DNA of 64,000 bases, from IMG/VR virus record IMGVR_UViG_3300021962_000021, positions 1 to 64,000 of that record; one strand, given 5' to 3'. The notes beneath the pieces are model-generated. The model saw nothing but the letters and a program-made list of their open reading frames with translations. It made no database searches and was not told the origin of the DNA. Position numbers and translations under genes: made by a program. Numbering within the stretch: position 1 is the first letter of the stretch; each line of letters starts with the position of its first letter. Positions 44,621 to 60,571 of the stretch are shown piece by piece.

Positions 44621-44648
44621 TTTTATATTTATAAGAAACTATATAATC

Positions 44649-45482
44649 ATGCTACTTAAAAAAGGAGATAACAACGAGAACGTAAAATTAATGCAAGAGA
44701 AGTTAGGAATTTCTCCTGCAGTAACTAACTTTGGTCCAAAAACCGAAGCAGCAGTAAAAGAATTTCAAGCAAAGCACGGATTAACTGCCGATGGTATTGT
44801 TGGTGATAAAACGTGGGCGATGATTATGGGAGAGAATACTCCACCACCGCCACCACCTGCACCGATTGTACCTGTTGGTGGTTTGAAATTGGATGCATTA
44901 AAAGGACATGTTCCTGATGCAGTTATCCAAATGATTCCCGATACAGCGGCCAAATTCCAAATCAACACTCCATTAAGATTAGCACACTTCTTAGCACAAT
45001 GTGGACATGAAAGTGGTGGATTTAGAGTAACACAAGAGAATTTAAACTATTCAGCAAAAGGTTTGAATGGTATATTTAAGAAATATTTCCCAACTGAAGC
45101 TGCAGCAGCATCCTACGCTAGACAACCACAAAAGATTGCAAACAAAGTATATGCAAATCGTATGAGTAATGGTGATGAGGCTAGTGGGGATGGCTTTAAG
45201 TTTCGTGGTAGAGGATATATCCAATTAACAGGTAGAGCAAACTATACTGAATTTGGTAAAGCAATCGGAGAAGATATTGCAAATAACCCTGATATAGTTA
45301 GTGGAAAGCACGCATTATTATCGGCAGCATGGTTCTGGTCTAAAAATGGATTGAACAAAATGGCTGATGGTGGTGCAAGTGATGTAGTAGTAACATCTAT
45401 TACTAAGAGAGTAAATGGTGGAACTATTGGATTAGCAGACCGTATCAAACACTTTAAAGAATACTATCATTTATTAGCATAA
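44649..45482 (+). CDS. endolysin: peptidoglycan-binding domain plus GH19 domain
   Basis: FGPKTEAAVKEFQ..LTADGIVG; LAHFLAQCGHES, FRGRGYIQLTG, VNGGTIGL; probable start 44649. Confidence 0.92.
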   Translation: MLLKKGDNNENVKLMQEKLGISPAVTNFGPKTEAAVKEFQAKHGLTADGIVGDKTWAMIMGENTPPPPPPAPIVPVGGLKLDALKGHVPDAVIQMIPDTAAKFQINTPLRLAHFLAQCGHESGGFRVTQENLNYSAKGLNGIFKKYFPTEAAAASYARQPQKIANKVYANRMSNGDEASGDGFKFRGRGYIQLTGRANYTEFGKAIGEDIANNPDIVSGKHALLSAAWFWSKNGLNKMADGGASDVVVTSITKRVNGGTIGLADRIKHFKEYYHLLA

Positions 45483-45780: not shown

Positions 45781-46434
45781 ATGAGACAAAAAGTAACAGC
45801 ACTGGCATTAGGCCTTAAGGAAAGAGCTATATATTTTATACTAGCTCCATTTTTAGCATTCATTGGACTTGCGTTTTTATTCCAAGTCTTTTTTGTAATC
45901 CTTCAATTTAGTGGAAATGAAAATCTTGCAACAGATATTGCAAATGAAATTTCATGGAGAATTGATGGAACATTTAAAAATTCACCAGAAAACATTTGGT
46001 ATAACGCAGATGAACACATTTGGGTTGAAAGTGTAGAAAACAAAGTAAAGATTGGTAAATTGGCGGGAAACCGTAATTTGGAATTTGGTGTTAAGAATGT
46101 ATTAGAAGAATATTTACAGGATAAAAATTATAATTTATCTCCTGATGCTACGCAAAAACTTAAAGTAGAAATTGTATATTTAGATGTCTTAACTACAAAG
46201 ACAAACATTTCAGTATTTCATAAAGGGGAAGAAGAAGTTGTTATCAGAATGAAGGGTATCCTTTATAAAGATGGCAAAAAAGAAAAAGAGGTAATGGTTG
46301 AAGAATCATCATCAGAAATTTCCATGTCTACACTTATTGTTGACCAGGGTGGTAAATTCAATCAAACTTCGTTATCAAACGCACTTAAAAAAGCAGCAGA
46401 TAAACTAATAACAAAACTTTTTGAAAAAAAATAA
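45781..46434 (+). CDS. membrane-anchored envelope protein (CsgG/LptE-like alpha/beta fold candidate)
   Basis: N-terminal TM; C-terminal SNALKKAADKLI helix pattern like 54044. Confidence 0.45.
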   Translation: MRQKVTALALGLKERAIYFILAPFLAFIGLAFLFQVFFVILQFSGNENLATDIANEISWRIDGTFKNSPENIWYNADEHIWVESVENKVKIGKLAGNRNLEFGVKNVLEEYLQDKNYNLSPDATQKLKVEIVYLDVLTTKTNISVFHKGEEEVVIRMKGILYKDGKKEKEVMVEESSSEISMSTLIVDQGGKFNQTSLSNALKKAADKLITKLFEKK

Positions 46435-46435
46435 T

Positions 46436-48103
46436 ATGAAAAAATTATTAAGTATTTTAGGGGTATTATTGATGGTATCCCTTTCGTCTTTTGGACAAAT
46501 CATAGTTAATCAATCAATTTCTACTGGACCTTATAAAGTTGGTGATACCATCACAGTAACTTATAATGTAGATAAAGGAACAACTAAACCACGTTATTTT
46601 TGGTTGAGATATCAATATAATAATAAGGCGTTGACTTACCTTTCTACCACATTTTCACAAGGTAATCAATCTCAAACATATTATACAAGTTGGAATAACT
46701 ATAAGTTTACTGCAGCTGCAAACATATCAGATACTTCATTATATGCACAATATAGTGCAACTCCTTGGGGATATGCAGTAAATGCAGATTGGAATGTTGG
46801 CCAATTGGCAATTCAAAGAGCAGACCAAAGTGTGAATGGTGTAATAGCAACCCAAAAATATATTCTTAAAGACCAAAATGTTTATGAAAATTTTCACAAA
46901 TTAGATTTATCATACGCATTAGATAGTGCAACGGGTAATAACATTCCGTTTGTAAAAACAACATCTGGACCATTATCCATTACAGGGGTTACGGGTAATA
47001 CTTCTTTCTTTAAGGTGAGAGTTTTATTTCCAAATGGATATACAATTACAGACCACAATGTTCAATTAATGAGATTGAAAAATGATGGAACCGGTGATAT
47101 TGATTGGTCACAACAACCGATTGCACAAAGAGCATTGGATGCAAGTGGCGAAGCTCTATTCACTTCGGGTATTAAAGTTGGTGATTCGTTGGGTGTATTT
47201 GTATCACCCGCTTCACAAAAGACTTGGATGAATAATGTAATAACCGTATCGGATGCATATAAATCATTTTTGGGTGTTTCTCAAACTGATTTAAGTGGTG
47301 TTCCTACATTTTTCACTCGTCCAAATTTTGAAAAGAAAATAGGTAATATTACAAAAAATGATATGACATTTACCGAAGCAGATGCATACTATTCATTTGC
47401 ATATGTGATGGGGCAAGACGTATCGGCAAATGCATTTGTTCCAACATCAACAGCAACTTCGTGGAGATGGCATAGTGGTTTGTTAAACCAGAGTTGGTTA
47501 GATGGAACTTCTAAATATAGAGTATATGTAACACAACCTGCACAGACTGTAAATGCTGTATTTGCATGGGGTGGTGATTTAGATTGGTCACATTCATCTC
47601 ATCCTGATACGGTAGCAGCTAGAATAGCAAGTGGTATTTACACAAATGCAGCTAATCCTGGATCATCTGATGTTGCTACTATTAAAACTATGGCAATGAC
47701 TTCATATTCTACTAATGTTTATGAAAATAAAACAGCGGAGACTGCAAAATTATCTATCGTTTCTAAATTAGAGGGTGGTAAGGTTGTATTAACCGGTGCA
47801 TTGACAAAAGAAGGATTGGCGGGTTTACAGGTTGTAATGAATTATGATTCTACGAAATTAGAATTAGAAAATGTAATATTTGATGCGGGTTCAACAATTA
47901 CCAACTTCTCAACAAAAGAAAATGGTAGATTGACATTTGGTTCAATTGACCAATTAAAAACGGCTAGAATCAAAACGGGTATACCATATAAATTAGTATT
48001 TGCACCAAAGGGAGAATTAACAAATACGGCTGGTTTATTCTTCTTTGTATTGGCAGATGCAGTAGATGGTGCCGGTAAAAAAGTTGAATTAACCATAGAA
48101 TAA
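46436..48103 (+). CDS. exported cohesin/dockerin-like protein
   Basis: signal peptide SFG|Q; ITVSDAY/ADAY dockerin-like repeats; C-terminal GLQVVMNYDSTKLEL cohesin-like. Confidence 0.55.
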   Translation: MKKLLSILGVLLMVSLSSFGQIIVNQSISTGPYKVGDTITVTYNVDKGTTKPRYFWLRYQYNNKALTYLSTTFSQGNQSQTYYTSWNNYKFTAAANISDTSLYAQYSATPWGYAVNADWNVGQLAIQRADQSVNGVIATQKYILKDQNVYENFHKLDLSYALDSATGNNIPFVKTTSGPLSITGVTGNTSFFKVRVLFPNGYTITDHNVQLMRLKNDGTGDIDWSQQPIAQRALDASGEALFTSGIKVGDSLGVFVSPASQKTWMNNVITVSDAYKSFLGVSQTDLSGVPTFFTRPNFEKKIGNITKNDMTFTEADAYYSFAYVMGQDVSANAFVPTSTATSWRWHSGLLNQSWLDGTSKYRVYVTQPAQTVNAVFAWGGDLDWSHSSHPDTVAARIASGIYTNAANPGSSDVATIKTMAMTSYSTNVYENKTAETAKLSIVSKLEGGKVVLTGALTKEGLAGLQVVMNYDSTKLELENVIFDAGSTITNFSTKENGRLTFGSIDQLKTARIKTGIPYKLVFAPKGELTNTAGLFFFVLADAVDGAGKKVELTIE

Positions 48104-48104
48104 T

Positions 48105-50396
48105 ATGAAAAGATTATTAGTTACTTTATTACTTTTATTAACATCATTTTTAGGGTTCGGACAGAGTGTATCTGCTCCGGACTCTAAATCATTTTTACCA
48201 TCTACAGCAGGACAGGATGCTAGTGGATTTAGTTTGAGTGGTTTTAGTTCAACAGCAACCCTTTTAGCATCAATCAGTTTAGTAAACCCACCATCGGGTA
48301 CAACCTTTTATCTCAATACAACAGCAGGTTTAACCGCAGCAAGTGGATTCACTTTAGCAGGTAATAAGACTCGTTTAGTGGTAACGGGTACAATGGCTAA
48401 TATCAATACGGCATTAGCATCTCTTAAAGTAAATACTGGTTCGGTAAGAGGTAATGTTGCATTATCCGTAGCAGCAACTGTAAATCCAACCGGATACTAT
48501 TACAATGGTGTAAACGGACATTTTTATAGACCAATATCAACAACTGCAACTTATATAAATGCTAGAACATTAGCATCACAACAAACATTCAAAGGACAAC
48601 AAGGATATTTAGTAACAATAACTTCAGCCGATGAAGATGCTTTCATTTTTAATAATGTACCACAAGGTAATATTTGGTTTGCATTAACAGATGAAGTAAG
48701 TGAAGCAAGATGGACAATTGATGCGGGACCTGAAGCAGGAACTTTAATTAAAATCAATAATGGACAATTAAATGGAAACATACCAGGTCAATACAACAAC
48801 TGGGCACCCGGTGAACCAAACAATAGTGGTAATGAAGATTATGCAGTAACTAAATGGGGTGGTGGTTCTCAATGGAATGATTTACCAAACCATTTTTCAA
48901 ATCCTTATGTAATTGAATTTGGAACTTGGACTAACCCTGATAATGCAACATTTACAGAGTTTTACACCAATTCAGTAACACATACAAACGGAGAAGTTCT
49001 AACCGCAAGATTCAATATTGATTTTGGTAATAATGTAGATGAAACTAAATTTTCAGCAAAAGCAAACACTTTTGTAAATAATGTGTGGGGTGTAACAACA
49101 AACACATCGAGAGTATTAAGTGGGTTGGGTAAAGCAGATTTAACAAATGATTTAGATACGATAAAAGTAAATGGTAATGGTGTTAGAGCAACAACAACGG
49201 GAGGACAAGTAGAATGGTGTGTAGTATATGATTATGAACCATCAAATCAAAGATACCAAATTTTAATAGATAAAAGAGAATTTCCACAAGGCATTTCAGC
49301 AAGTGGTGTTACAACTTTACAATTATTTGATTTGTGGAATGGACCCGTGACGTATCAATGGGATGATGGAACATGGGCTGCTTATTGGATTTATACACCA
49401 ACAGAATTTAATTTTGCAGGTTCATCATTTACATCTAATATAAGACGAGCTGGATTTTTTTGGGGATTAAGTGCAGAATTTACATTTACGCCCATTCAAA
49501 TATACAAACAACATGGAGTAGATTTATCATACATCAACCAAACTGATTTAAATACTTTGTATAATAGTATTGTGACCGTATCAGATGTGTATTTAGCATT
49601 TAAGGAATTGGCTAATGGTGGGATATTTGGAAACGAAACAGGTAATGAATTTGGATATGGTATACAATTTATGAATGCTGATGTAGATGGTAATGGTGTA
49701 TTTAATGAAGCAGATACTTACAAATTATTACAACATTTAACAGGTATACAATCAATAAACGAATATCAAACATTAACATATTTGATGAAGTTATATGGTA
49801 AATCGGAATATGATGGGATTACAAAATCAAATTGGAATACACAATTTAACTCAACGAGGAGTTTATATCCATTCAGTTTAAATACCGGAACACTTAACAA
49901 CACATATAATGTTAGTGTAAGTTGGAAAGGTGATGTAAATCTTTCACATTCGGCAATACCTGTAGTTAATACCACACCTAATTCAATTACAGGTATGAGT
50001 ATTAGAACAATGAGTATTCCTACATCAAATCAAATAAACGCATCAATTATAACCGAAATGGTTGGTGATAGTGTTTATGCATATATCACAATAGACCCAT
50101 TACAACAAGAATTAGTAGGAACACAATTTCAAATAAATTACGATAATACTTTATTGAAATTTGGAAATGTATCCTATAAAACAAAAGGTTCACCAACTAA
50201 CTATGGAACCGATAAATCAACATATGTAAATTTGGGTTCTTTAATTACGGATGGTGGAACTTTGGATAATACTACGGAATATAAAGTATCATTCACAACA
50301 AAATCAAAATTGAATAATGTATTAGGATTAATTTCAATTGGATTTATGGATGCGGTAAATAAAGCAGGAACAACATTAAAAATTAGAATGCAATAA
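48105..50396 (+). CDS. exported C-type lectin / dockerin / cohesin-like protein
   Basis: signal GFG|Q; GHFY..GYLVTITS..NNWAPGEPNNSGNEDY..WNDL (C-type lectin, EPN motif); ADVDGNGVFNEADTY (dockerin/EF-hand); GTQFQINYDNTLL (cohesin-like). Confidence 0.72.
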   Translation: MKRLLVTLLLLLTSFLGFGQSVSAPDSKSFLPSTAGQDASGFSLSGFSSTATLLASISLVNPPSGTTFYLNTTAGLTAASGFTLAGNKTRLVVTGTMANINTALASLKVNTGSVRGNVALSVAATVNPTGYYYNGVNGHFYRPISTTATYINARTLASQQTFKGQQGYLVTITSADEDAFIFNNVPQGNIWFALTDEVSEARWTIDAGPEAGTLIKINNGQLNGNIPGQYNNWAPGEPNNSGNEDYAVTKWGGGSQWNDLPNHFSNPYVIEFGTWTNPDNATFTEFYTNSVTHTNGEVLTARFNIDFGNNVDETKFSAKANTFVNNVWGVTTNTSRVLSGLGKADLTNDLDTIKVNGNGVRATTTGGQVEWCVVYDYEPSNQRYQILIDKREFPQGISASGVTTLQLFDLWNGPVTYQWDDGTWAAYWIYTPTEFNFAGSSFTSNIRRAGFFWGLSAEFTFTPIQIYKQHGVDLSYINQTDLNTLYNSIVTVSDVYLAFKELANGGIFGNETGNEFGYGIQFMNADVDGNGVFNEADTYKLLQHLTGIQSINEYQTLTYLMKLYGKSEYDGITKSNWNTQFNSTRSLYPFSLNTGTLNNTYNVSVSWKGDVNLSHSAIPVVNTTPNSITGMSIRTMSIPTSNQINASIITEMVGDSVYAYITIDPLQQELVGTQFQINYDNTLLKFGNVSYKTKGSPTNYGTDKSTYVNLGSLITDGGTLDNTTEYKVSFTTKSKLNNVLGLISIGFMDAVNKAGTTLKIRMQ

Positions 50397-50740
50397 TGAA
50401 GAAGATATTATTTATATTATTTTTATCGTTGGTAGCTTGTAAAAAGGTAGAAGTTATACCACAACCAGAACCAACACCTATTGATATTTTTTCAGTAAAT
50501 GAAGTAACTCTTACAAACGGACAAGATTTTAATTTTACTTTAAAAAGTGGTGGAGTTCATATAATTACATTATTTGATTCAACCACCCAACAGGTTGTAA
50601 CTAAAGAAAAAATTAACGGAATTGTAGGTAATAACACAAAAAAAATATATACTAAATCATTATCACAAAAAAGTTTATATTTATACATAGTTAATGAGAA
50701 TAACCAAGAAATAGGCAGAACTTTAATTAAAATCCAGTAA
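50396..50740 (+). CDS. lipoprotein
   Basis: lipobox LVAC; small beta-rich domain. Confidence 0.7.
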   Translation: MKKILFILFLSLVACKKVEVIPQPEPTPIDIFSVNEVTLTNGQDFNFTLKSGGVHIITLFDSTTQQVVTKEKINGIVGNNTKKIYTKSLSQKSLYLYIVNENNQEIGRTLIKIQ

Positions 50741-50742
50741 CA

Positions 50743-51108
50743 ATGAAAAAACTTTTATTTGTATTATTTACAATTGTAATGGTTGGTTGTACAAAAACAC
50801 CAATAGCACCATTGCCACCACAAGTTGACAATTCTTTAAAAATTGAAAAAGTTGCAGGTATCAAATTGCAATCACCATTTGTGACTTCAGAAGTTGCAAT
50901 GAATGTGAAAGTAGAAACCTCACAAACTGTTACTGTAAAAATCATTGATATTGCAAACAGAGTAGTATCAAAAGAAGAAATGTATTTAAATTCCGGAGAT
51001 AACATCTTAAAAGTATATACCACCGCTTTACCAGCATCGGCATATAGAATAGGATTATATGATAAAAACGGAAATTTATTAGGAATCACAGATTTTAACA
51101 AACTATAA
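50743..51108 (+). CDS. lipoprotein with T9SS C-terminal-sorting-domain-like Ig fold
   Basis: lipobox MVGC; VKIIDIANRVV..GDN...TALPASAYRI resembles type A CTD. Confidence 0.55.
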   Translation: MKKLLFVLFTIVMVGCTKTPIAPLPPQVDNSLKIEKVAGIKLQSPFVTSEVAMNVKVETSQTVTVKIIDIANRVVSKEEMYLNSGDNILKVYTTALPASAYRIGLYDKNGNLLGITDFNKL

Positions 51109-51120
51109 AAACAAAAATTT

Positions 51121-51426
51121 ATGTCAGAAGAACAAAAAGAATCAGGTGGAACTTCATTGAAAAACATTATTTTGGGATTGGTATCGACTATAACTTTAGG
51201 TGTTGGTGGTTGGTTCACAACTAAATTAACAGGTGGAGATGAAAAAGAAGCAGCTCCAGTTCAACAAGCAGCTCCTGTAATTAACATCCAAAACACCAAT
51301 CAACAATCTCAAGCGGCAGGTGGTGGAAAAACTGTAATCGTTAAAGAAAAAACAGTAGAAAAACCGGCAGCTCCAGTTAAGAAGAAAGAAGGTGATGAGT
51401 TCAAAGAGAAACCGGCAGAATGGTAA
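51121..51426 (+). CDS. single-TM protein
   Basis: IILGLVSTITLGVGGWF TM then Q/K-rich tail. Confidence 0.65.
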   Translation: MSEEQKESGGTSLKNIILGLVSTITLGVGGWFTTKLTGGDEKEAAPVQQAAPVINIQNTNQQSQAAGGGKTVIVKEKTVEKPAAPVKKKEGDEFKEKPAEW

Positions 51427-51518
51427 TATGGTATCAAATAGGGACAGTTCTATTTTTTATAGTAGGACTTTCGTTATTAATTAATTGGTCATTTAAAATA
51501 AAGAAAAAAGATGAGTAA
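51420..51518 (+). CDS. 32 aa single-TM peptide
   Basis: hand-read MVIWYQIGTVLFFIVGLSLLINWSFKIKKKDE, overlapping both neighbours. Confidence 0.45.
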   Translation: MVIWYQIGTVLFFIVGLSLLINWSFKIKKKDE

Positions 51519-52176
51519 TCAACAACCGCCAAGCGGATTTAGGGATTTATTAAACGCAATGATGAAACGTAGATGGTATATTACTGCGTTGGTATTGGGT
51601 GGATTTATGTTTATAATGGCCGGAATGTTCGCCGCTATCGGTATAGGAACAAAAATGGCAGCAGAGTGGAAGGAACTTCTATTATTGTTATTAGGTGCGT
51701 TTATTGGTAGCTATGGTAAAATCATAGATTACTGGTTTAGTGATACCGATAAGGATAAGATGTTAGTTCAGAAAATGGATGAAGAAGATGGTGTTTCGAT
51801 GTCGCATACAAACGATATGAAAGAAACTAATAAACCAGTAACTCCAATCATTCCAGATGCATTTGTAGCAGGAGCAGCTGCAGCAAGAGAATTAGCAGTA
51901 GTAGAAAACAAACAAAATTTTGAATTGGCTAAAATCGAAGCAAGTCAACCAAAACCGGTAGAAACTCCAAAATCACAACCAAGAACAGGTGTTGAAGTTG
52001 ATGAAGATGGTGATGGTGTAATGGATGGTATTGATTTTGATGGTGATGGTAAGATTGATATGTATTTCGCACATAGACAATGTGAACACATTTGGGGTGA
52101 TACTGACCATAATGGTGAAGAAGAATGTCAGAAATGTGGAAAGATAAAAGATGAAGATGCTGAAATGGCAGGATAA
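51511..52176 (+). CDS. two-TM protein with acidic EF-hand-like loops
   Basis: two TMs, DYWFS, DEDGDGVMDGIDFDGDG, C-terminal C..CG. Confidence 0.65.
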   Translation: MSNQQPPSGFRDLLNAMMKRRWYITALVLGGFMFIMAGMFAAIGIGTKMAAEWKELLLLLLGAFIGSYGKIIDYWFSDTDKDKMLVQKMDEEDGVSMSHTNDMKETNKPVTPIIPDAFVAGAAAARELAVVENKQNFELAKIEASQPKPVETPKSQPRTGVEVDEDGDGVMDGIDFDGDGKIDMYFAHRQCEHIWGDTDHNGEEECQKCGKIKDEDAEMAG

Positions 52177-52215
52177 AATGGGTTATTTAATTAATAACAA
52201 TTAAAAACAAAAACT

Positions 52216-52488
52216 ATGGGATTTTGGAAAGAATTATTTAAAGACAACAATGATATCAACGAAAAATCAGTAGTTGGTTTCTTATCATTCGCATGTATGG
52301 TAATTGCATTATTCGTAGACTTGGTAACAGGTTGGATGGGTAAAGAATTATTAATTAACGAATATATTTTTAACGGATTTTTAGTAATCACATTGGGTGC
52401 ATTTGGTATCGCATCGGTTGATAAATACATCAACAGAAAAGCGGAGCATGATAAAAACAAACTGGACGCCGGTGTAGAAGAAGGATAA
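52216..52488 (+). CDS. two-TM membrane protein (holin-like candidate)
   Basis: INEKSVVGF, two hydrophobic helices, charged tail. Confidence 0.6.
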   Translation: MGFWKELFKDNNDINEKSVVGFLSFACMVIALFVDLVTGWMGKELLINEYIFNGFLVITLGAFGIASVDKYINRKAEHDKNKLDAGVEEG

Positions 52489-52504
52489 TAATTTGGTAAT
52501 ATTG

Positions 52505-52533
52505 AAAACCCTCACTTTTAGTGGGGGTTTTTT
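52505..52533 (+). terminator. intrinsic terminator
   Basis: AAAACCCTCACT / AGTGGGGGTTTT stem plus T run; resembles the 40791 terminator. Confidence 0.8.
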
Positions 52534-52543
52534 ATTTATAGGT

Positions 52544-53239
52544 ATGAAAGATTTATTAACAATTGTAATTCCTTGTAAAAATGAAAAAGATAACATATAT
52601 GAGTGTATTTCATTTATTGCAAAACAAGTGGGAAGCACAGGACTTAAAATTATTATTGCAGATAATTCCGATGAAGGTGATAGTTTAGATTTTTTATATT
52701 ATGTTCAGAGAGATTTTAAATATTCTTTAGATATTCAATTTATACAAGGTGGATTTCCAGCAAAAGCAAGATTGGAAGGTAGTAAATTAGTAGAAACACC
52801 TTATATTCTATTCTTAGATGCAGATATAATGTTACAAGATAAATTTGTATTGGGTGAATGTTTAGCATATAATACAGATTTAGTAACTGTCCCATTTCAA
52901 ACCGAAAAAGGATTCAATTGGATATTCCGATTATTTGATATTCAACAAAGAATGAGTAATTGGTTAGGAACTCCATTTGCTATTGGTGGGTTTCAATTGT
53001 GGAAAACCGAATCATATTGGAAAACTGGAGGATATGATGAAACCCATTTATTTGCAGAAGATTATTGGGTTTCACAAAAAACAGAAGTGATGAAAATACA
53101 CAATACAAAAGGTATTTGGACATCGGCTAGAAGATTTAAAAATAAAGGTTTCTTTTATATGTTTTGGTTGAGTATAAAATGTTATTTTAATAGAAATAAT
53201 TCGGAATTTTTTAAACAACATCACAATTATTGGATATGA
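52544..53239 (+). CDS. GT2-family glycosyltransferase
   Basis: IVIPCKNE, FLDADI, GGYDE, AEDY, TSARRF; probable start 52544. Confidence 0.85.
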   Translation: MKDLLTIVIPCKNEKDNIYECISFIAKQVGSTGLKIIIADNSDEGDSLDFLYYVQRDFKYSLDIQFIQGGFPAKARLEGSKLVETPYILFLDADIMLQDKFVLGECLAYNTDLVTVPFQTEKGFNWIFRLFDIQQRMSNWLGTPFAIGGFQLWKTESYWKTGGYDETHLFAEDYWVSQKTEVMKIHNTKGIWTSARRFKNKGFFYMFWLSIKCYFNRNNSEFFKQHHNYWI

Positions 53240-53306
53240 AAAAAAAGATTTATTTTAAAGAAATTTTAATTGGAACAACCATTTTAATGATAATCCTTAT
53301 TAAACT

Positions 53307-54038
53307 ATGCACTCTATAAAATACAAAGCAATTATAGTATCCGACTTACATTTAGGAACAAAAGATAGTAAAGCAGAAGAGTTTATTGAATTTTTAGAAG
53401 AACATCCAACCGAACTATTGGTGTTAAATGGTGATATAATTGATGGTTGGGCAATCAATAGAGGAAGTAAGTGGAAAAAACAACACACAAAAGTAATAGG
53501 TAAATTACTTAAACTTTCAAATAAAACACAAATCATTTGGATAAGAGGAAACCATGACGAATTTATACAAGAATTTATGGGAAACCATTTTGGCGGAATT
53601 GAAATTAGAGAAGATTATATTATCGACTTACCTAATTCTAACAAAAGTTATTATATTTTCCACGGAGATGTTATTGATGTTTTTATAACAAAATATAAAT
53701 GGTTAGCAAAAATAGGTTCAGTAGGATATGATTTTGCACTTTGGTTAAATAGATGGTATAATCGTTATAGAAAATGGAGAAACTTACCATACCAATCAAT
53801 ATCACAAAAAATTAAAAGTGGAGTAAAAGCTGCCACAAATTACATAAACGATTTTGAAACAACTGCTCTATCAATGGCATCTAAAAAAAGATGTGATGGG
53901 GTTATGTGTGGACATATTCATCAACCAGAAGATAGAATGATAAATGGACATCATTATCTTAATTCAGGAGATTGGGTTGAAAATATGACTGCTATTTGTA
54001 TAGATAAAGAGGAAACTCTATATTTATATAAAAAATAG
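53307..54038 (+). CDS. calcineurin-like phosphoesterase, LpxH2/PlcP family
   Basis: SDLHLG, NGDIIDGW, RGNHDE, HGD, CGHIH, NSGDWVE. Confidence 0.85.
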   Translation: MHSIKYKAIIVSDLHLGTKDSKAEEFIEFLEEHPTELLVLNGDIIDGWAINRGSKWKKQHTKVIGKLLKLSNKTQIIWIRGNHDEFIQEFMGNHFGGIEIREDYIIDLPNSNKSYYIFHGDVIDVFITKYKWLAKIGSVGYDFALWLNRWYNRYRKWRNLPYQSISQKIKSGVKAATNYINDFETTALSMASKKRCDGVMCGHIHQPEDRMINGHHYLNSGDWVENMTAICIDKEETLYLYKK

Positions 54039-54043
54039 TATGT

Positions 54044-54763
54044 ATGAAAAAATTATTCGTATTATTCGTTGGCTTTTTGTTAAGCAATGTTGTAGTTGCC
54101 CAAACTGTGGGAAGCACAAAAACTGAACAATATAAAGCATCATTTGAAACCGCAATTGATATTTCTAACTTTTTAGATTATGATGGACCACAAATTCCAA
54201 TCCAAATCTTAAAGTGTGGTATTTCCGATGAGATGTATGAAATGTATCCTGAACTAAAAGAGAAAAGAGTAGGATTGGGTGTAGCAAATATTTCAATGGA
54301 ATATTTGGAAAACCTTAATCGTTTCAAATTTACCGAAGATAAAACTGAAATTAAAAACAGAATGGTGCAACAATTCAAAGCATCAAACGCTGGTATTTCT
54401 GAAAACAAAATTGAAGGTAGAGGTAAAATCAATTTAGCAAAATACTTCGTAACAATCGAATGTTATGATTATTCGGTATCAGAAGATGAGACAGTGAATT
54501 TAAAAGATGGTGTTAAAAACCTAATGGTGACTCGTATCGGTTTACAGGTTAGATTTACCGATGCAGAAACAGGTGTAGTATTCGGAGCAAGTGGTTTGGG
54601 TGAGGCCAAAACTACAAGAGAATTAACTTTATTATCAGATGCAACCATTGATCCTGTTAAGTTTAACCAATCTACTATTTCTATCGCAACAAAGAAAGCA
54701 TTGGATATTGCTTGTGCTAGAATTTTAGATAGAATGATTAAAAAACAAATCTTTACTAAATAA
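54044..54763 (+). CDS. CsgG-like exported protein
   Basis: signal VVA|Q; LENLNRFKFTE, IGLQVRFTDAETG, ATKKALDIA pattern. Confidence 0.6.
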   Translation: MKKLFVLFVGFLLSNVVVAQTVGSTKTEQYKASFETAIDISNFLDYDGPQIPIQILKCGISDEMYEMYPELKEKRVGLGVANISMEYLENLNRFKFTEDKTEIKNRMVQQFKASNAGISENKIEGRGKINLAKYFVTIECYDYSVSEDETVNLKDGVKNLMVTRIGLQVRFTDAETGVVFGASGLGEAKTTRELTLLSDATIDPVKFNQSTISIATKKALDIACARILDRMIKKQIFTK

Positions 54764-54966
54764 TGATAAGATTAAGTAATTTAATTAAAGAAACAAGTGC
54801 AGACCATTCTAACGATAGGGATATGGTGGTAGGAGTTACGGAAATAATTAAAATGGTAAAAGATTTAGACAATAGAAAAGATATAGCAGTTTCAATGATG
54901 GCAAAATTCAGAAATGAAGATGTTATATTTGATAAAGATGAATTTTTAAAAATGTGTCAAATATGA
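54763..54966 (+). CDS. hypothetical protein
   Basis: 67 aa, starts MIRLSNLIKE. Confidence 0.55.
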   Translation: MIRLSNLIKETSADHSNDRDMVVGVTEIIKMVKDLDNRKDIAVSMMAKFRNEDVIFDKDEFLKMCQI

Positions 54967-55247
54967 AAAACTTACTATTAGCAGCAATATTGTTATTAGG
55001 AATAGCAAGTTGCACTCCGGTTAAATATGTAATGATTGACCCTAAAGATTCTACAAAATTGGTAGAGGTTAGAAAGAGAATTGTATATGATGATTATTAT
55101 ATGCAATCTCCATTGTTTTATAATTATTGGATAACACCACATTATAGAACACCTATTATTATACAACAACCAATTAGAGTTCCTCAACCACCGGTTAGAT
55201 ATAAACAATCAGCACCTATAAGAAAATTTGAACCACGTAAAAGATAA
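54963..55247 (+). CDS. lipoprotein
   Basis: lipobox IASC. Confidence 0.65.
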   Translation: MKNLLLAAILLLGIASCTPVKYVMIDPKDSTKLVEVRKRIVYDDYYMQSPLFYNYWITPHYRTPIIIQQPIRVPQPPVRYKQSAPIRKFEPRKR

Positions 55248-56662
55248 TGAAAAAGTGGTTAATAGGTCTTATTGTTGTTTTATTATTTGCTTTAAAAGCC
55301 AATGGACAAACCTATACCCAAACTTATGTTGATAAGTGTACCGGAGAAATTAAGATAGTTACAACATCCTATGTAAATGGTAATGCAATAGTTTCTTTTT
55401 ATAATCAAGTAAAGATATTCACACCATCGGAAGTTGCAACCGGTGTAGTTCAGGGGTGGTTAAACTCAGTTTATGCACAATATAATTCGATGGCATGCCC
55501 AACGAATCAGGTAGTAACACAGACTGTTCAAAATACAGTTACACAAGCTGCTTCACAAGCCGCATCTTCTGCAGCAAGTGCAGCTGCAAGTTCAGCGGCA
55601 TCTTCATCGGCAAGTTCGGCAGCAAGTAGTTCAGCATCATCTGCGGCATCATCATCTGCAAGTTCGGCAGGTAGTTCTGCAGCAAGTAGTGGGGCATCGG
55701 CTTCTTCATCAACACCGCCGGCAAGTAGTAGTTCATCTAGTAGCTCATCTTCATCTAGCTCAAGCAGTTCATCTTCTTCATCATCTTCGGAAAGTAAAAC
55801 TGAAACAAAGAGTGAGGGTAGTTCTTCATCATCCGAGTCAAAGAGTGAGAGTAAATCGGAAAGCAAATCGGAAGAATCAAAATCCGAAAGTAAGAGTGAA
55901 GAAAAGAAAGAAGAATCTAAATCCGAATCCAAAGAAGAAAAGAAAGAGGAAAAAAAGGAAGAGAAGAAAGAATCCAAAAAAGAAGAAAAGAAAAAATCAG
56001 GTGGATTAAACCCAATGATATTGGCATCAGATTTAACAGCGGCACAAAATCCTGATAAAAAAATGAATGCAATTTTGGGATTGGGTTGGAGTAGAGCAAG
56101 TATGGCCGGTGATGAATCATTCTCTGCAAATGCAATGATATGGAGTAATTTAAAACAATTTGCATTAGGTGGTGGTTATACTAAAATGGAATTTGATGAA
56201 GGACAATTAAAAGCAATCCATTCATATGGAACTACTGTCGCATATTTGGATGGTAACTATATGAATTTAATGAGTTACACTTATATTAAACCACATCCAA
56301 AACACGGAACATATGGTTATAATTTGGGTGTTGTGAATTTATTTATTAAAAATCCAGAAAAAGATAGATGGGAATATAATATGATTTCATCGGGTGTAGC
56401 ATTTTGGACTAAACCATACGCATATAGTAAAAAATTGACAATATCACCACAAACATTTATTTTACTATCACCAATTAGTTATAATTCTACAACAGGAAAC
56501 ACATTGGTAAATAGACATATGGGATTTTTAGTAGGAAGTTCATTTGACTATAAAATCAGTAAAAGATTTGGATTCAGCATAAACTATAAGATAGCAGGAA
56601 ACACTATGCCTGGATCTCCTATATTACATAATGTATTAATTGGAAGCAGATTAATATTATAA
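55247..56662 (+). CDS. exported protein with Ser/Ala and Glu/Lys low-complexity linker and C-terminal beta-barrel-like domain
   Basis: signal ANG|Q; alternating hydrophobic strands in the last ~220 aa. Confidence 0.65.
   Translation: MKKWLIGLIVVLLFALKANGQTYTQTYVDKCTGEIKIVTTSYVNGNAIVSFYNQVKIFTPSEVATGVVQGWLNSVYAQYNSMACPTNQVVTQTVQNTVTQAASQAASSAASAAASSAASSSASSAASSSASSAASSSASSAGSSAASSGASASSSTPPASSSSSSSSSSSSSSSSSSSSSSESKTETKSEGSSSSSESKSESKSESKSEESKSESKSEEKKEESKSESKEEKKEEKKEEKKESKKEEKKKSGGLNPMILASDLTAAQNPDKKMNAILGLGWSRASMAGDESFSANAMIWSNLKQFALGGGYTKMEFDEGQLKAIHSYGTTVAYLDGNYMNLMSYTYIKPHPKHGTYGYNLGVVNLFIKNPEKDRWEYNMISSGVAFWTKPYAYSKKLTISPQTFILLSPISYNSTTGNTLVNRHMGFLVGSSFDYKISKRFGFSINYKIAGNTMPGSPILHNVLIGSRLIL
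55546..55997 (+). repeat. low-complexity coding repeat (SSAA / poly-Ser / SESK / EEKK)
   Basis: visible in translation, synonymous codons varied. Confidence 0.9.
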
Positions 56663-56686
56663 CTTATATTTATTTTAAAATTATAG

Positions 56687-57289
56687 ATGAAAAAATTATT
56701 TACGTTATTTACACTTTTAGTTATTGGTGTTATAACATTCGCACAAGATACCGTTAGAGTTAAAAACAATGTATTCGAAGTTCTTTATTCACAATCATTG
56801 GAACAACCATTGATGATTAAATATCATTCAACAAATAGACCTACAAAGGTTAATAGAGGTGCTATGGATTTTTACAAAGAACCAAATATCAAAACATCCG
56901 ATGCTGATGATTACAAAGCAAACATATATGATAAAGGACATGGTGCACCCGCTGCAACATTCTCTGATAATATCGAAAATCTTAAACAAACATTTTCGTA
57001 TTTGAATTGTATTCTACAAGACCAATATCTTAATAGAGGTGAGTGGAGATTGTTAGAGGAACAAGAAAGAAAGTGGGATGATACTGAAAATTTAACAGTA
57101 GTAATTAAAGTTTTATTTGATAAGCCTGTTAAAAGAATACCAACAAATGCTGCAATACCAATTGTTTTACAAAAGCATATTTATTTTGAAAACCAAAAGA
57201 AATGGAAGTGTTATGTATTTTTAAATGAAAGACCTAAATATAAGTGGGAAGAATTAGAAATGATTTGCCCACCATCTGACCATAAATAA
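56687..57289 (+). CDS. exported DNA/RNA non-specific endonuclease (NucA family)
   Basis: signal TFA|Q; YDKGHGAPAA, LNRGEW..LE. Confidence 0.88.
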   Translation: MKKLFTLFTLLVIGVITFAQDTVRVKNNVFEVLYSQSLEQPLMIKYHSTNRPTKVNRGAMDFYKEPNIKTSDADDYKANIYDKGHGAPAATFSDNIENLKQTFSYLNCILQDQYLNRGEWRLLEEQERKWDDTENLTVVIKVLFDKPVKRIPTNAAIPIVLQKHIYFENQKKWKCYVFLNERPKYKWEELEMICPPSDHK

Positions 57290-57305
57290 AACAAAAATTT
57301 AAGTA

Positions 57306-57719
57306 GTGTTTAAACCAAATCATTTACACTTATTAGTGAAGGGATATATGAGCACCCCACCAAAAGAAGAAGCTCATTTGAATGAATTTTTTAAGAAATT
57401 AGTAGAGAAAGTAAGAATGGTAGTAGTTGCCGGACCAACATCCGTTTATGTTAATGAACCGGGTAATGAAGGAATAACAGGAACGGTGACATTAGCAACA
57501 TCGCATGCTAGTATTCACGTTTGGGATGCGGAAAGACCTGCAATGTTCCAATTTGATTTATATAGTTGTTCGGAATTTACAGCAGAAGAAGTATTAGAAG
57601 AATTAGATAATTGGTTTGGATTAGAATCAGCAAATTGGATAATGTTAGATAGAAATGGTGATGATTTTGATTCTATTGTATCCGGAAAATGGGAAGGGGC
57701 TGGGGTAACCACGTCGTAA
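57306..57719 (+). CDS. pyruvoyl-dependent S-adenosylmethionine decarboxylase-like proenzyme
   Basis: HLLV, GITGTVTLATSHASIHVW, FDLYSC; GTG start. Confidence 0.75.
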   Translation: MFKPNHLHLLVKGYMSTPPKEEAHLNEFFKKLVEKVRMVVVAGPTSVYVNEPGNEGITGTVTLATSHASIHVWDAERPAMFQFDLYSCSEFTAEEVLEELDNWFGLESANWIMLDRNGDDFDSIVSGKWEGAGVTTS

Positions 57720-58752: not shown

Positions 58753-59122
58753 GGGGATGTTTGGTATTGATTGCCATGCGAATGATAATATCACAAGTAG
58801 AGAAATGATACTATCTCTTAATATCGTATCGAAACAATAAATGACGAAAAGTCAACAATGACTTACGATGACCTTATGGCATTCGTAGGTATGGATTACG
58901 CTGTAGCAGCCTAATCCTACTCGGGTCGGAATACATATAACCTAGGAACAGAAGTATCTATAAAGGTGGAAAATTGACTGAACCCAAAATCGAGTCAAAA
59001 CATTGATTATGATAAAATGTAAAAACTCATATATTTGTCAGTTGTGAATAACTGAATAAACTTGTGAGACGTTGGTATTATGATTACTCGGTAAGACACG
59101 GGTTCGACTCCCGTCATCTCCA
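58753..59122 (+). ncRNA. ssrA: tmRNA
   Basis: GGGGATG/CATCTCC acceptor stem with G3-U, T-arm GGTTCGACTCC, tag ORF 58843-58914 ending YAVAA-stop. Confidence 0.95.
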
Positions 59123-59212
59123 CAAAAACGCTAATATGTAAAGTATTGATTGTCAATAAGGCGTTGATTATCAATGAGTTATAACTTATTGATTTTCAAT
59201 GACTTAAGAAAG

Positions 59213-59692: not shown

Positions 59693-60562
59693 AAGATTGA
59701 AAATATTTTACATAGTAGGCTCGTCCTACATAGTAAACAACCGCCGCCTATGGTGGTTAAATAAACTACGAAAGTAGGATAAAGTGAGAATGCTTGGTTT
59801 AGTATTCTTGCGGCATCAGCAATGGTGCTTGAGTAGGCAAGTGGGATATCATCTGAGCCTTGTACGAAAGGGTAACACTATATCGGAAGGGTTTGGGTGA
59901 CTGGGGATATGTAGAATCTCTAGTTGAGTTCGGAAGAACAATAAGAATAACCCATAGAATATCAGTAAGAAGTATGTGGCTAATCACTATATATCATTGC
60001 GGTATTCAATTTCAAAGTGGTCTTAAAACCAAGCTATCCGAAAGGACGTAAGGTATGTTAATGTACAAGTGGTGTTGTTATTAACCTTTAATGTGGGACA
60101 CCAATCCCTATTAATGAAGATGACTTAAAAAATGGTGTTGACGATAACACATTGGGTAGTTTAGTATTCTCTCGTTCAAAAGATGGGGGAGCTGGTTGGC
60201 AAGCCACTACCTGAACAATCTACAAACCAAACTCAAATTTGCTTTAGGTGCAAACTATAAATCAATTTTAAGCTTAAGTGCTTGCCAGTTACGGACGAAA
60301 GGTGTCTACATAGTAATGGGTTGTCCATTGCCACGATACCACCGCAAGTGGTCTGTGATTCTTACGAAAAGTTTCTAGTTCCGCAAGAATGAATTTGCTC
60401 GGCAGGGTAGAAGAAATAGAGTAATGAGAGAGTAGTCAGTAACTCAATGAGTGGTTAGCATTACTAACCGACACTGAACGGATACATCTCAAAAGGGTGT
60501 GGATAAGAAAGGAAAAAAATAATCTTTCTAAAGGACGTTCTTCCCAAATGTGTAATCTCAGC
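59693..60562 (+). ncRNA. large structured ncRNA, GOLLD-like
   Basis: ~870 nt without credible ORF, many GNRA-capped hairpins, own promoter, ends directly before a tRNA; boundaries approximate. Confidence 0.65.
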
Positions 60563-60571
60563 ATTTTATAA

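What the first reader, a model, noticed from the sequence alone, without database searches (positions are those of the whole stretch)
52544..54038. GT2 plus PlcP/LpxH2-like phosphoesterase: possible phage-driven membrane lipid remodelling
Seen: a two-gene unit after a terminator, with its own TATTTATA motif. The phosphoesterase has the GDIIDGW, KWLAKIG..YD, CGHIH and GDWVE pattern I associate with PlcP (LpxH2). Known: PlcP is a phospholipase C that releases DAG under phosphate starvation, which a neighbouring glycosyltransferase converts to glycolipid in alphaproteobacteria. Inference: the phage may free phosphate from host phospholipids for DNA synthesis, which fits with phoH in the same window.
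Basis: partly seen in the sequence, partly recalled or inferred. Interest (0 to 1): 0.62.

Follow-up and report, generated by a model that had tools for sequence, protein, structure and literature searches.

The report
Phage PlcP-like phosphoesterase with glycosyltransferase partner
A 238-kb aquatic phage, probably of Flavobacteria-type hosts, carries a conserved gene pair: an enzyme of the PlcP family, which bacteria use to strip phosphate head groups from membrane lipids, and its own small glycosyltransferase, so the phage may swap host phospholipids for sugar lipids, though no activity has been measured.

Summary
A GT2 gene (52544-53239) and a 243-aa metallophosphoesterase (53307-54038) follow a strong terminator hairpin.

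The phosphoesterase is not LpxH:
- It scores 57.8 bits on the LpxH model (cut-off 134).
- It has GNHD where LpxH has GNRD.
- It is 38-39% identical to orthologues of the two characterised PlcPs and 17% identical to E. coli LpxH.
- In a maximum-likelihood tree it falls on the PlcP side of a 100/99-supported split.

On that side it sits in a phage-only clade, next to the second LpxH-like paralogue of Bacteroidota. In bacteria that paralogue is usually followed by a GT-B glycosyltransferase.

The GT2 is a different, largely viral family. It lies directly upstream of the phosphoesterase in 73 of 79 informative IMG/VR loci. The pairing survives GT2 divergence to 32% identity and a reversal of gene order.

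Related phage genes were acquired at least three times; the pelagiphage Mosig copy lies beside pstS.

The enzymology and the phosphate-scavenging purpose are inferred, not shown. The GT2 acceptor cannot be read from homology.

Verdict: a new phage-borne variant of the PlcP-glycosyltransferase lipid-remodelling module, usually annotated as lpxH.

The parts
52504..52532 (+). Intrinsic-terminator-like hairpin (13 pairs, then a T run) that closes the upstream gene 52216-52488 and sets off the two-gene unit
   Evidence: one of 2 terminator-like sites in 51000-57500; sequence read
52533..52540 (+). Copy of the recurrent upstream element TATTTATA (9 of 10 matches to the genome-wide TATATTTATA), 3 nt before the GT2 start codon
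   Evidence: There are 40 plus-strand copies in the genome and 24 lie within 40 nt upstream of ORF starts. The count in the window alone is not above chance.
52544..53239 (+). GT2-family (GT-A fold) glycosyltransferase, 231 aa. It has no signal peptide and no transmembrane segment. F90, D92 (DxD motif), D173 and E14 are invariant and D94, E172, R196 and R197 nearly invariant across 88 family members.
53240..53306 (+). Spacer of 67 nt between the two genes. It is absent from most relatives, where the GT2 stop and the phosphoesterase start overlap. A 27-codon hydrophobic mini-ORF (53236-53319) runs across it.
   Evidence: Sequence; relatives; a DNA contig joint 53238->53319 in run X1
53307..54038 (+). 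PlcP/LpxH2-type calcineurin-like metallophosphoesterase, 243 aa. All metal-ligand motifs are present (D13, H15, D43, N82-H83, H119, H203, H205). A helical cap insertion spans about residues 122-193.
54019..54028 (+). Full-consensus TATATTTATA inside the 3' end of the phosphoesterase gene, 16 nt before the next ORF (54044-54763). It marks the downstream limit of the unit.
56687..57289 (+). Endonuclease_NS with an N-terminal signal peptide. In related phages this gene follows the phosphoesterase with a 4-nt overlap (GT2-phosphoesterase-nuclease operon). Here it lies 2.6 kb downstream.

Best explanation
The pair is a phage-borne version of the bacterial PlcP-glycosyltransferase membrane-lipid-remodelling module.

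Shown:
- The 243-aa protein is a cytoplasmic, LpxH-shaped metallophosphoesterase of the PlcP/LpxH2 clade.
- It is kept next to a dedicated small GT2 in a large, abundant group of aquatic phages (contigs up to 382 kb).

Inferred:
- During infection the phosphoesterase works at the inner face of the host cytoplasmic membrane as a phospholipase C. It cleaves glycerophospholipids into diacylglycerol and a phosphorylated head group.
- The GT2 transfers a sugar from a nucleotide sugar to the lipid product. This yields a phosphorus-free glycolipid that keeps the bilayer intact.
- The released phospho-head group feeds the phosphate pool. The phage needs that pool to replicate a 238-kb genome (about 476,000 P atoms per copy) in phosphorus-poor fresh and brackish water.

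The secreted non-specific nuclease that is operon-linked to the pair in relatives would tap the other large cellular P pool.
For: Family assignment:
- The protein scores 57.8 bits on NF003743, the same range as the PlcP orthologues of S. meliloti (38) and P. aeruginosa (55). E. coli LpxH scores 364.
- phmmer gives 186-195 bits to the PlcPs and no more than 37 bits to true LpxH.
- Identity is 38-39% to the PlcPs and 17% to E. coli LpxH.
- The motifs GNHDE, CGHIH and GDWVE and the cap motifs are shared with PlcPs. LpxH has GNRDF and HGHTHRP.
- The careful ML tree splits LpxH plus Bacteroidota paralogue A from PlcP plus paralogue B plus phage at 100/99. The window protein sits in a 10-row phage clade (100/99) inside the Bacteroidota-type group (98/94).
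- The AF2 model's top 25 PDB matches are all LpxH, so the protein has the core-plus-cap architecture.

Identity of the references:
- L008 lies beside sinR/sinI, which makes it the SMc00171 orthologue. L009 is followed by a GT4 gene and an adenylate cyclase gene, which makes it the PA3219-PA3218 pair.

Coupling to a glycosyltransferase:
- The GT2 is directly upstream in 73 of 79 informative IMG/VR loci.
- The pair also occurs in distant lineages with GT2 identity of 32-39% and phosphoesterase identity of 38-60%, once in reversed order.
- The pair moved as a unit between genomes, and the phosphoesterase is the best-conserved gene of the neighbourhood at 84%.
- Partners differ by lineage but are always glycosyltransferases: a GT-B (PF13528/TIGR00661) in 47 Bacteroidota loci and in a gut phage contig, and a GT4 in P. 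aeruginosa.

Phosphate link:
- F. johnsoniae PlcP (log2 change 8.6) and a pf04101 glycosyltransferase (5.4) are induced by Pi depletion (PMC8115612).
- The pelagiphage Mosig homologue is divergent from pstS.
- PlcP is widespread in low-P waters, including in Flavobacteria (PMC4796936).
- The phage group occurs in estuary, freshwater and riverine metagenomes of 12 or more studies.

Location:
- Neither protein has a signal peptide or a transmembrane segment. Both have amphipathic aromatic/basic helices.
Against: - No activity has been measured for any member of the phage clade or of Bacteroidota paralogue B.
- I could not confirm that F. johnsoniae Fjoh_4577 is paralogue B.
- The GT2 has no detectable homology to Agt, or to the Bacteroidota GT-B within ±5 kb of the bacterial loci. 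Only 54 of 88 family members, not the window protein, touch the GT21 model. Fold and profile matches are generic GT-A.
- In 6 of 79 viral loci the phosphoesterase has no GT2 within 4 kb.
- The genome has no pstS. phoH is 47 kb away and is near-universal in large phages.
- RNA-library contigs cover the flanking genes of relatives but barely the pair, so expression is not shown.
- In P. distasonis it is paralogue A, not B, that lies by pstS, so adjacency to pstS is a weak argument.
Confidence: 0.5

Rival explanations
1. The biochemistry is the same (phospholipid to diacylglycerol to glycolipid) but the benefit is different. The phage remodels the envelope to exclude superinfecting phages, to alter receptors or surface charge, or to condition the membrane for assembly or lysis. 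Phosphate supply is not the point.
For: In the window the pair sits in a cluster of envelope-directed genes: an endolysin-like gene at 44538-45482, several signal-peptide and lipoprotein genes, and membrane proteins. Lipid renovation is known to affect phage attachment (PMC9938194, PMC9804370; listed). The genome has no pstS.
Against: The neighbourhood is not conserved. In relatives the pair lies by dUTPase, dCMP deaminase, a ThyA-like gene and a nuclease. The characterised cellular homologues are Pho-regulon genes. The Mosig copy lies by pstS.
Confidence: 0.2
2. The pair acts on lipopolysaccharide or another sugar-lipid pathway. The phosphoesterase would be a pyrophosphatase acting on UDP-2,3-diacylglucosamine or a similar nucleotide- or polyprenyl-linked sugar lipid, as its usual lpxH annotation says. 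The GT2 would modify lipid A, core, O-antigen or a polyprenyl-phosphate sugar, as in seroconverting phages.
For: The protein matches the LpxH model over its full length, and LpxH structures are the best structural matches. Sources name the homologues LpxH. The GT2 resembles polyprenyl-phosphate and teichoic-acid GT-A enzymes such as PcManGT, TarP and ArnC. The substrate of Bacteroidota paralogue B has never been determined.
Against: The score is far below the curated LpxH cut-offs, the LpxH-specific GNRD motif is absent, and the protein lies on the other side of a 100/99 split. All nine Bacteroidota genomes checked carry a separate paralogue A that groups with LpxH and scores higher on the LpxH model; the five also searched for LpxI lack it. 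The GT2 lacks the transmembrane helices of GtrB/ArnC-type enzymes.
Confidence: 0.13
3. The pair belongs to DNA hypermodification. The GT2 would glycosylate hydroxymethylated bases in phage DNA, like the phage GT-A DNA glycosyltransferases. The phosphoesterase would process a nucleotide or pyrophosphate intermediate.
For: Phage DNA GT-A enzymes have TarP as best PDB match and an EDY/F motif (bioRxiv 10.1101/2023.12.21.572611). This GT2 also matches TarP best and has AEDY. In relatives a ThyA-family gene, a dCMP deaminase gene and a dUTPase gene lie 2-3 kb upstream.
Against: The window's genome keeps the pair but has no ThyA-family gene by HMM or by tblastn with the relatives' protein. The phosphoesterase keeps the PlcP-type lipid-binding cap motifs at 38-46% identity to cellular enzymes. 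TarP-like matches are generic for GT-A. The TET/JBP search was uninformative because the control rang nowhere.
Confidence: 0.07

Closest known systems
PlcP with Agt or Pgt: the Pho-regulated lipid-remodelling module of Proteobacteria (S. meliloti SMc00171; P. aeruginosa PA3219/PA3218; Phaeobacter MED193; SAR11 HTCC7211)
   Same: The phosphoesterase is of the same clade (38-39% identity, shared GNHDE/CGHIH/GDWVE and cap motifs, same side of a 100/99 split). It is a tight gene pair with a glycosyltransferase.
   Different: The pair is carried by a phage. The partner is a 231-aa GT-A (GT2), not GT4 Agt or GT21 Pgt, and lies upstream rather than downstream. Host Pho control is not evident. Activity is untested.
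Bacteroidota LpxH-like paralogue B with a GT-B of the MJ1255/VC2487 family (PF13528). F. johnsoniae 'PlcP' Fjoh_4577 and the Pho-operon glycosyltransferase Fjoh_0541 probably belong here.
   Same: These are the nearest cellular relatives of the phage enzyme (36-46% identity; sister group at 98/94). A glycosyltransferase follows within -4 to about +20 nt in 47 loci.
   Different: The phage clade replaced the GT-B with an unrelated GT2. No GT-B or Agt homologue exists in the phage genome. A gut phage contig (MT836169) kept the GT-B.
LpxH (UDP-2,3-diacylglucosamine diphosphatase of lipid A synthesis)
   Same: The overall architecture is the same: a metallophosphoesterase core plus a helical cap. 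LpxH structures are the best structural matches, and LpxH is the usual automatic annotation.
   Different: The protein is below both curated cut-offs, has GNHD rather than GNRD, is 17% identical, and lies on the opposite side of the main split.
Phage phosphate-stress auxiliary genes (pstS, phoA, phoH)
   Same: The proposed benefit is the same: easing phosphorus limitation of phage replication. The Mosig homologue is divergent from pstS, and phoH is present in this genome.
   Different: Those genes act on uptake or are of unknown mechanism. This pair would mine an internal lipid pool and replace it.
Phage GT-A DNA glycosyltransferases (bioRxiv 10.1101/2023.12.21.572611)
   Same: GT-A fold, TarP as best PDB match, and an EDY-type motif.
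   Different: They are associated with ThyS or 5mYOX genes, which this genome lacks. Here the constant partner is a lipid-type phosphoesterase.

Membership tests
PlcP (LpxH2-type phospholipase C) | Calcineurin-like metallophosphoesterase core with all metal-ligand motifs | tested here: met
   PF00149 matches at 2.8e-13. D13, H15, D43, N82, H83, H119, H203 and H205 are invariant in 22 sequences.
PlcP (LpxH2-type phospholipase C) | LpxH-like helical cap insertion carrying PlcP-type conserved motifs | tested here: met
   The AF2 model has helices at 122-193, and the top 25 PDB matches are LpxH. The cap motifs KWLA..G..Y, PYxSxS and VKxAxNYI align with the S. meliloti and P. aeruginosa PlcPs but not with LpxH.
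PlcP (LpxH2-type phospholipase C) | Groups with experimentally characterised PlcPs to the exclusion of LpxH | tested here: met
   In the careful ML tree of 75 rows the split has 100/99 support. phmmer gives 186-195 bits to PlcPs and no more than 37 to LpxH.
PlcP (LpxH2-type phospholipase C) | Genomic coupling to an enzyme that makes a phosphorus-free lipid from diacylglycerol | tested here: inconclusive
   A glycosyltransferase is adjacent in 73 of 79 viral loci. It is a GT2 whose acceptor is unknown.
PlcP (LpxH2-type phospholipase C) | Induction by phosphate limitation (PhoB control) | not testable with these tools
   The gene sits behind a phage-type upstream element. RNA-library contigs are uninformative.
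PlcP (LpxH2-type phospholipase C) | Phospholipase C activity that releases diacylglycerol from glycerophospholipids | not testable with these tools
   This needs an enzyme assay or lipidomics.
LpxH | Score above the curated cut-off of the LpxH equivalog models | tested here: not met
   NF003743 gives 57.8 bits against a cut-off of 134. E. coli LpxH scores 364 and 389 on the two models.
LpxH | GNRD motif (Arg in place of the canonical His) and the HGHTHRP motif | tested here: not met
   The phage protein has GNHDE and CGHIHQP. All 6 LpxH sequences have GNRDF.
LpxH | Clusters with LpxH in a phylogeny | tested here: not met
   It lies on the opposite side of the 100/99 split. Bacteroidota paralogue A is the one that groups with LpxH.
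Agt (GT4) / Bacteroidota GT-B partner glycosyltransferases | GT-B fold with GT4 or PF13528 domains | tested here: not met
   The window GT2 has a GT-A fold and matches PF00535 only. It has no BLAST similarity to the partners.
Pgt / GT21 lipid glycosyltransferases | Match to the GT21 model PF13506 | tested here: inconclusive
   The window protein has no match at E <= 0.01. 54 of 88 family members match, best E 4.8e-11. The homologue in L011 matches at 1.6e-9.
Phage GT-A DNA glycosyltransferases | Neighbourhood with ThyS-type hydroxymethylase or 5mYOX and C5-methyltransferase genes | tested here: inconclusive
   The window genome has no ThyA-family gene, but one lies 2-3 kb upstream in relatives. 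The TET/JBP search had no working control.

The most novel reading that the evidence does not exclude
Bacteriophages from several unrelated lineages actively convert host membrane phospholipids into phosphorus-free glycolipids during infection. The lineages are large aquatic phages of Bacteroidota-type hosts, a pelagiphage, a cyanophage and a gut phage. They would use independently acquired PlcP-type enzymes, and the Bacteroidota phages would add a virus-specific GT2 that makes a new viral glycolipid. Genes now counted as 'lpxH / LPS biosynthesis' auxiliary genes would then be a widespread lipid-phosphorus-mining strategy, with consequences for aquatic P cycling and lipid biomarkers.
Probability: 0.35. 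Interest if true: 0.8.

Novelty: new variant of a known kind. Interest (0 to 1): 0.62.

Why it matters
Phage genes that ease phosphorus limitation are so far mostly about uptake (pstS, phoA) or are of unknown mechanism (phoH). A phage-encoded PlcP-type enzyme with its own glycosyltransferase would add an internal source: the host's membrane phospholipids.

It would also mean that infected cells contribute to the glycolipid signals used as markers of P stress in natural waters.

The gene pair is very common. There are thousands of sequence variants, 322 IMG/VR stretches encode a relative of the phosphoesterase, and the pair is present in metagenomes of at least 12 studies.

The phosphoesterase is currently filed as lpxH under LPS biosynthesis, so the reassignment changes how auxiliary-gene surveys should count it.

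The GT2 is a compact, largely viral family whose product, if it is a lipid, would be a new virus-made membrane lipid.

The work also shows that Bacteroidota carry two LpxH-like paralogues with different affinities, which matters for annotating lipid A pathways.

Tried and rejected
1. Recent capture from the host. The 84-85% identical 239-aa hits looked like host genes, but their contigs are phage-like: all genes on one strand, with dUTPase, ThyA-like, nuclease and thioredoxin genes. The nearest bacteria are only 36-46% identical.

2. True LpxH. Rejected by scores, motifs and the tree.

3. Reading the GT2 acceptor from homology. Pfam, NCBIfam, PHROGs, Foldseek against PDB, the ESM atlas and a profile search of PDB give only generic GT-A/GT2. 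There is a weak full-length likeness to TIGR04283 and partial GT21 matches. tblastn against isolate phages found nothing, and against plasmids only weak hits.

4. A host-type partner elsewhere in the phage genome. There is no GT-B or Agt homologue, and each gene of the pair is single-copy.

5. DNA-modification context. The genome has no ThyA-family gene. The TET/JBP search is uninformative because nothing rang in the controls. The 'own' genome search also missed the phosphoesterase itself with the LpxH model, so its negatives, including pstS, are weak.

6. Expression. Only contigs of two metatranscriptomes were available. They cover the flanking genes of relatives and barely the pair, and DNA carry-over cannot be excluded.

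7. TATTTATA as a window-level enrichment. Not supported. The positional signal appears only genome-wide.

8. Literature. No paper in the library joins PlcP with phages or auxiliary genes. The Mosig paper that was read does not discuss the gene.

9. No complex prediction was run, because the report does not claim that the two proteins bind.

Full report
**What is there**

The window is the first 64 kb of a 238,219-bp virus record that CheckV rates complete. All genes lie on the plus strand, GC is 31.6%, and there is a tRNA cluster.

At the reported place, a 13-pair terminator hairpin (52504-52532) is followed by two genes:
- A 231-aa GT2 glycosyltransferase at 52544-53239 (PF00535, 3.3e-12).
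- After a 67-nt spacer, a 243-aa calcineurin-like phosphoesterase at 53307-54038 (PF00149, 2.8e-13).

**The TATTTATA motif**

In the window alone it is not more frequent than chance: 13 copies against 15.5 expected. Over the whole genome, 24 of its 40 plus-strand copies lie 1-40 nt upstream of an ORF start. The three overlapping 8-mers that spell TATATTTATA stand far above the other 53 8-mers of the same composition.

It is therefore a real upstream element of this phage. A 9-of-10 copy precedes the GT2 gene, and a perfect copy (54019-54028) precedes the next gene. Because the copy at the GT2 ends 3 nt before the ATG, I cannot say whether it acts in transcription or in translation initiation.

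**Is the phosphoesterase PlcP-like or LpxH?**

It matches the NCBIfam LpxH model over its full length, but at 57.8 bits against a cut-off of 134. I fetched reference sequences from annotated records:
- The S. meliloti gene beside sinR/sinI, the SMc00171 orthologue.
- The P. aeruginosa gene followed by a GT4 and an adenylate cyclase, the PA3219-PA3218 arrangement.
- E. coli lpxH and LpxH of Klebsiella, Neisseria, Ralstonia, Acinetobacter and Legionella.

On the same model the two PlcPs score 38 and 55 bits, and E. coli LpxH scores 364. phmmer with the phage protein gives 186-195 bits to the PlcPs and at most 37 to LpxH. Identity is 38-39% against 17%.

LpxH carries GNRDF and HGHTHRP. The phage protein, the PlcPs and their relatives carry GNHDE, CGHIH and GDWVE, and they share cap motifs that LpxH lacks.

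A careful maximum-likelihood tree of 75 sequences separates LpxH plus one Bacteroidota paralogue from PlcP plus the other Bacteroidota paralogue plus all phage copies, with 100/99 support. The AF2 model (pLDDT 83) finds LpxH structures as its 25 best PDB matches, so the core-plus-cap architecture is shared. No PlcP structure came up among the matches.

The protein is a member of the PlcP/LpxH2 clade by every sequence test available here. Its activity is untested.

**Where the gene comes from**

The word search returned thousands of hits, with the best 120 at 80-100% identity. These are not host genes. Their contigs, up to 382 kb, are phage-like.

The nearest bacteria are Bacteroidota at 36-46% identity. 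All nine Bacteroidota genomes I checked have two LpxH-like paralogues; the five also searched for LpxI have none:
- Paralogue A scores higher on the LpxH model (64-113 bits) and groups with LpxH.
- Paralogue B scores lower (49-68 bits) and groups with PlcP. The phage clade attaches to this one (98/94).

In 47 bacterial loci, paralogue B is followed within a few bases by a 330-360-aa GT-B of the MJ1255/VC2487 family (PF13528).

Lidbury et al. report that in F. johnsoniae a gene they call PlcP (Fjoh_4577) and a pf04101 glycosyltransferase in the phoBR operon rise 8.6 and 5.4 log2 units on phosphate depletion (PMC8115612). I could not verify that Fjoh_4577 is paralogue B.

**Other phages**

Homologues occur in:
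- Pelagibacter phage Mosig, where the gene is divergent from pstS.
- Synechococcus phage S-SRM01.
- A gut phage contig that kept the host-type GT-B.

On the tree these need at least three separate acquisitions. The records annotate them as UDP-2,3-diacylglucosamine hydrolase. A Lake Baikal survey lists lpxH among viral auxiliary genes under LPS biosynthesis (PMC9611531). I found no paper in the library that links PlcP to phages.

**The glycosyltransferase**

Its AF2 model (pLDDT 87) is a GT-A fold. TarP, TarS, chondroitin polymerase, SpsA and an archaeal mannosyltransferase are the best PDB matches, which is generic. The nearest ESM-atlas clusters are 100% viral.

A profile search of 1.84 billion representatives finds 82 clusters below 1e-30. 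Across 88 diverse members, E14, F90, D92 and D173 are invariant, and D94, E172, R196 and R197 nearly so. Of the 88, 54 also touch the GT21 model, but the window protein does not. It has no signal peptide and no transmembrane segment, but it does have amphipathic aromatic/basic helices. Homology therefore does not give the acceptor.

**Context is the strongest evidence for coupling**

- The GT2 lies directly upstream of the phosphoesterase in 73 of 79 informative IMG/VR loci.
- The pair recurs in distant lineages at GT2 identity of 32-39% (L121, L126/L127 and the P0305 contig).
- It occurs once in reversed order (L123/L124).
- Between this genome and a related phage the two genes moved together. 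The phosphoesterase (84%) and the GT2 (63%) are among the best-conserved genes of the neighbourhood, where others are 27-79% identical.
- The bacterial loci hold no homologue of this GT2, and the phage holds no homologue of the bacterial partners. The partner glycosyltransferase was replaced, but the partnership was kept.
- Six viral loci have the phosphoesterase without a GT2 within 4 kb, so the GT2 is not indispensable.

**Mechanism**

Shown: clade membership, intact catalytic motifs, cytoplasmic location by sequence, and a conserved gene pair.

Inferred from the characterised family (PMC4796936):
- The enzyme cuts phospholipids to diacylglycerol plus a phospho-head group.
- The GT2 glycosylates the lipid product.
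- The freed phosphorus serves replication of a large genome.

Circumstantial support comes from three points:
- pstS lies beside the Mosig copy.
- In relatives the pair is operon-linked to a secreted non-specific nuclease, which lies 2.6 kb downstream here.
- The group occurs in estuary, freshwater and riverine metagenomes.

I put 0.5 on this explanation as a whole, and about 0.9 on the clade assignment alone.

**Rivals**

- The same chemistry for another benefit, such as superinfection exclusion or envelope conditioning, fits the envelope-gene neighbourhood in this window, but that neighbourhood is not conserved (0.2).
- An LPS or polyprenyl-sugar role fits the annotation and the GT-A matches, but not the motifs or the tree (0.13).
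- DNA glycosylation deserves mention because phage DNA GT-A enzymes also match TarP and carry EDY, and relatives have a ThyA-like gene nearby. However, this genome keeps the pair without any ThyA-family gene, and the constant partner is a lipid-type enzyme (0.07).

**Limits**

- Expression is not shown. Contigs from two RNA libraries cover the flanking genes of relatives and only scraps of the pair.
- Negative results of the 'own genome' family search are weak, since it missed the phosphoesterase itself.
- The host is unknown. Bacteroidota, probably Flavobacteriia, is inferred from the tree, the GC content and weak DNA similarity to Flavobacterium phage immuto.

**Verdict**

This is a real, strongly conserved two-gene module. 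The phosphoesterase is a new phage-borne member of the PlcP/LpxH2 clade, paired with a virus-specific GT2. It is best read as a new variant of the PlcP-glycosyltransferase lipid-remodelling system. The biochemistry still has to be demonstrated.

Noticed in passing
window 60152-60564 (+): A full-length GOLLD RNA (Rfam RF02032, 278.6 bits against a gathering score of 150) lies inside the phage's tRNA region.
   Followed up: partly
window 58753-59125 (+): A phage-encoded tmRNA. ARAGORN calls it, with a tag peptide ending in AVAA, and Rfam RF00023 matches at 77.5 bits. It sits just upstream of 15 tRNA genes (59.3-63.7 kb).
   Followed up: partly
whole genome G000; examples at window 34299, 38364, 52533, 54019-54028, 58409: There is a recurrent upstream element TATATTTATA. 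Of 40 plus-strand TATTTATA copies, 24 lie 1-40 nt before ORF starts, far more than for other 8-mers of the same composition. It may be a phage promoter or a start-site element.
   Followed up: partly
window 53236-53319 (+): A 27-codon hydrophobic mini-ORF starts on the GT2 stop codon and ends over the phosphoesterase start. It lies in a spacer that most relatives lack, so it may be a chance ORF created by an insertion.
   Followed up: partly
window 45781-51108 and 54044-56662: A run of phage genes encodes proteins with Bacteroidota-style signal peptides or lipoprotein signals. It includes a cohesin-like 560-aa protein, a C-type-lectin-like 763-aa protein, and a 471-aa protein with long poly-Ser and Lys/Glu-rich tracts. 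The 239-aa product of 54044-54763 is 79% identical in a related phage, and relatives' copies are well covered by RNA-library contigs.
   Followed up: partly
window 57306-57719 (+): An S-adenosylmethionine decarboxylase-like gene (PF02675, 2.8e-12) follows the secreted Endonuclease_NS gene. It is a possible polyamine-related auxiliary gene.
   Followed up: no
loci L092-L109, L115, L116 (Bacteroidota genomes G001-G009): Every Bacteroidota genome checked has two LpxH-like paralogues, and both fall below NCBI's LpxH cut-off; the five also searched for LpxI lack it. Only paralogue A groups with LpxH, yet in the annotated records seen both are annotated as UDP-2,3-diacylglucosamine diphosphatase.
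   Followed up: partly
L011 (contig PLXT01000052.1, labelled Methanobacterium MAG); L025 and L090 (labelled Thalassobius and Citrobacter MAGs): L011 carries the phage-type GT2-phosphoesterase pair and looks like a phage contig binned into an archaeal MAG. The genomes behind L025 and L090 show the Bacteroidota two-paralogue pattern despite their proteobacterial labels.
   Followed up: no
L001 (Pelagibacter phage Mosig, MT647606.1 93031-94866): The PlcP-like gene, annotated as UDP-2,3-diacylglucosamine hydrolase, is divergently transcribed from a pstS-like phosphate-binding protein gene with a 150-nt shared upstream region. A Pho box there would be worth looking for.
   Followed up: no
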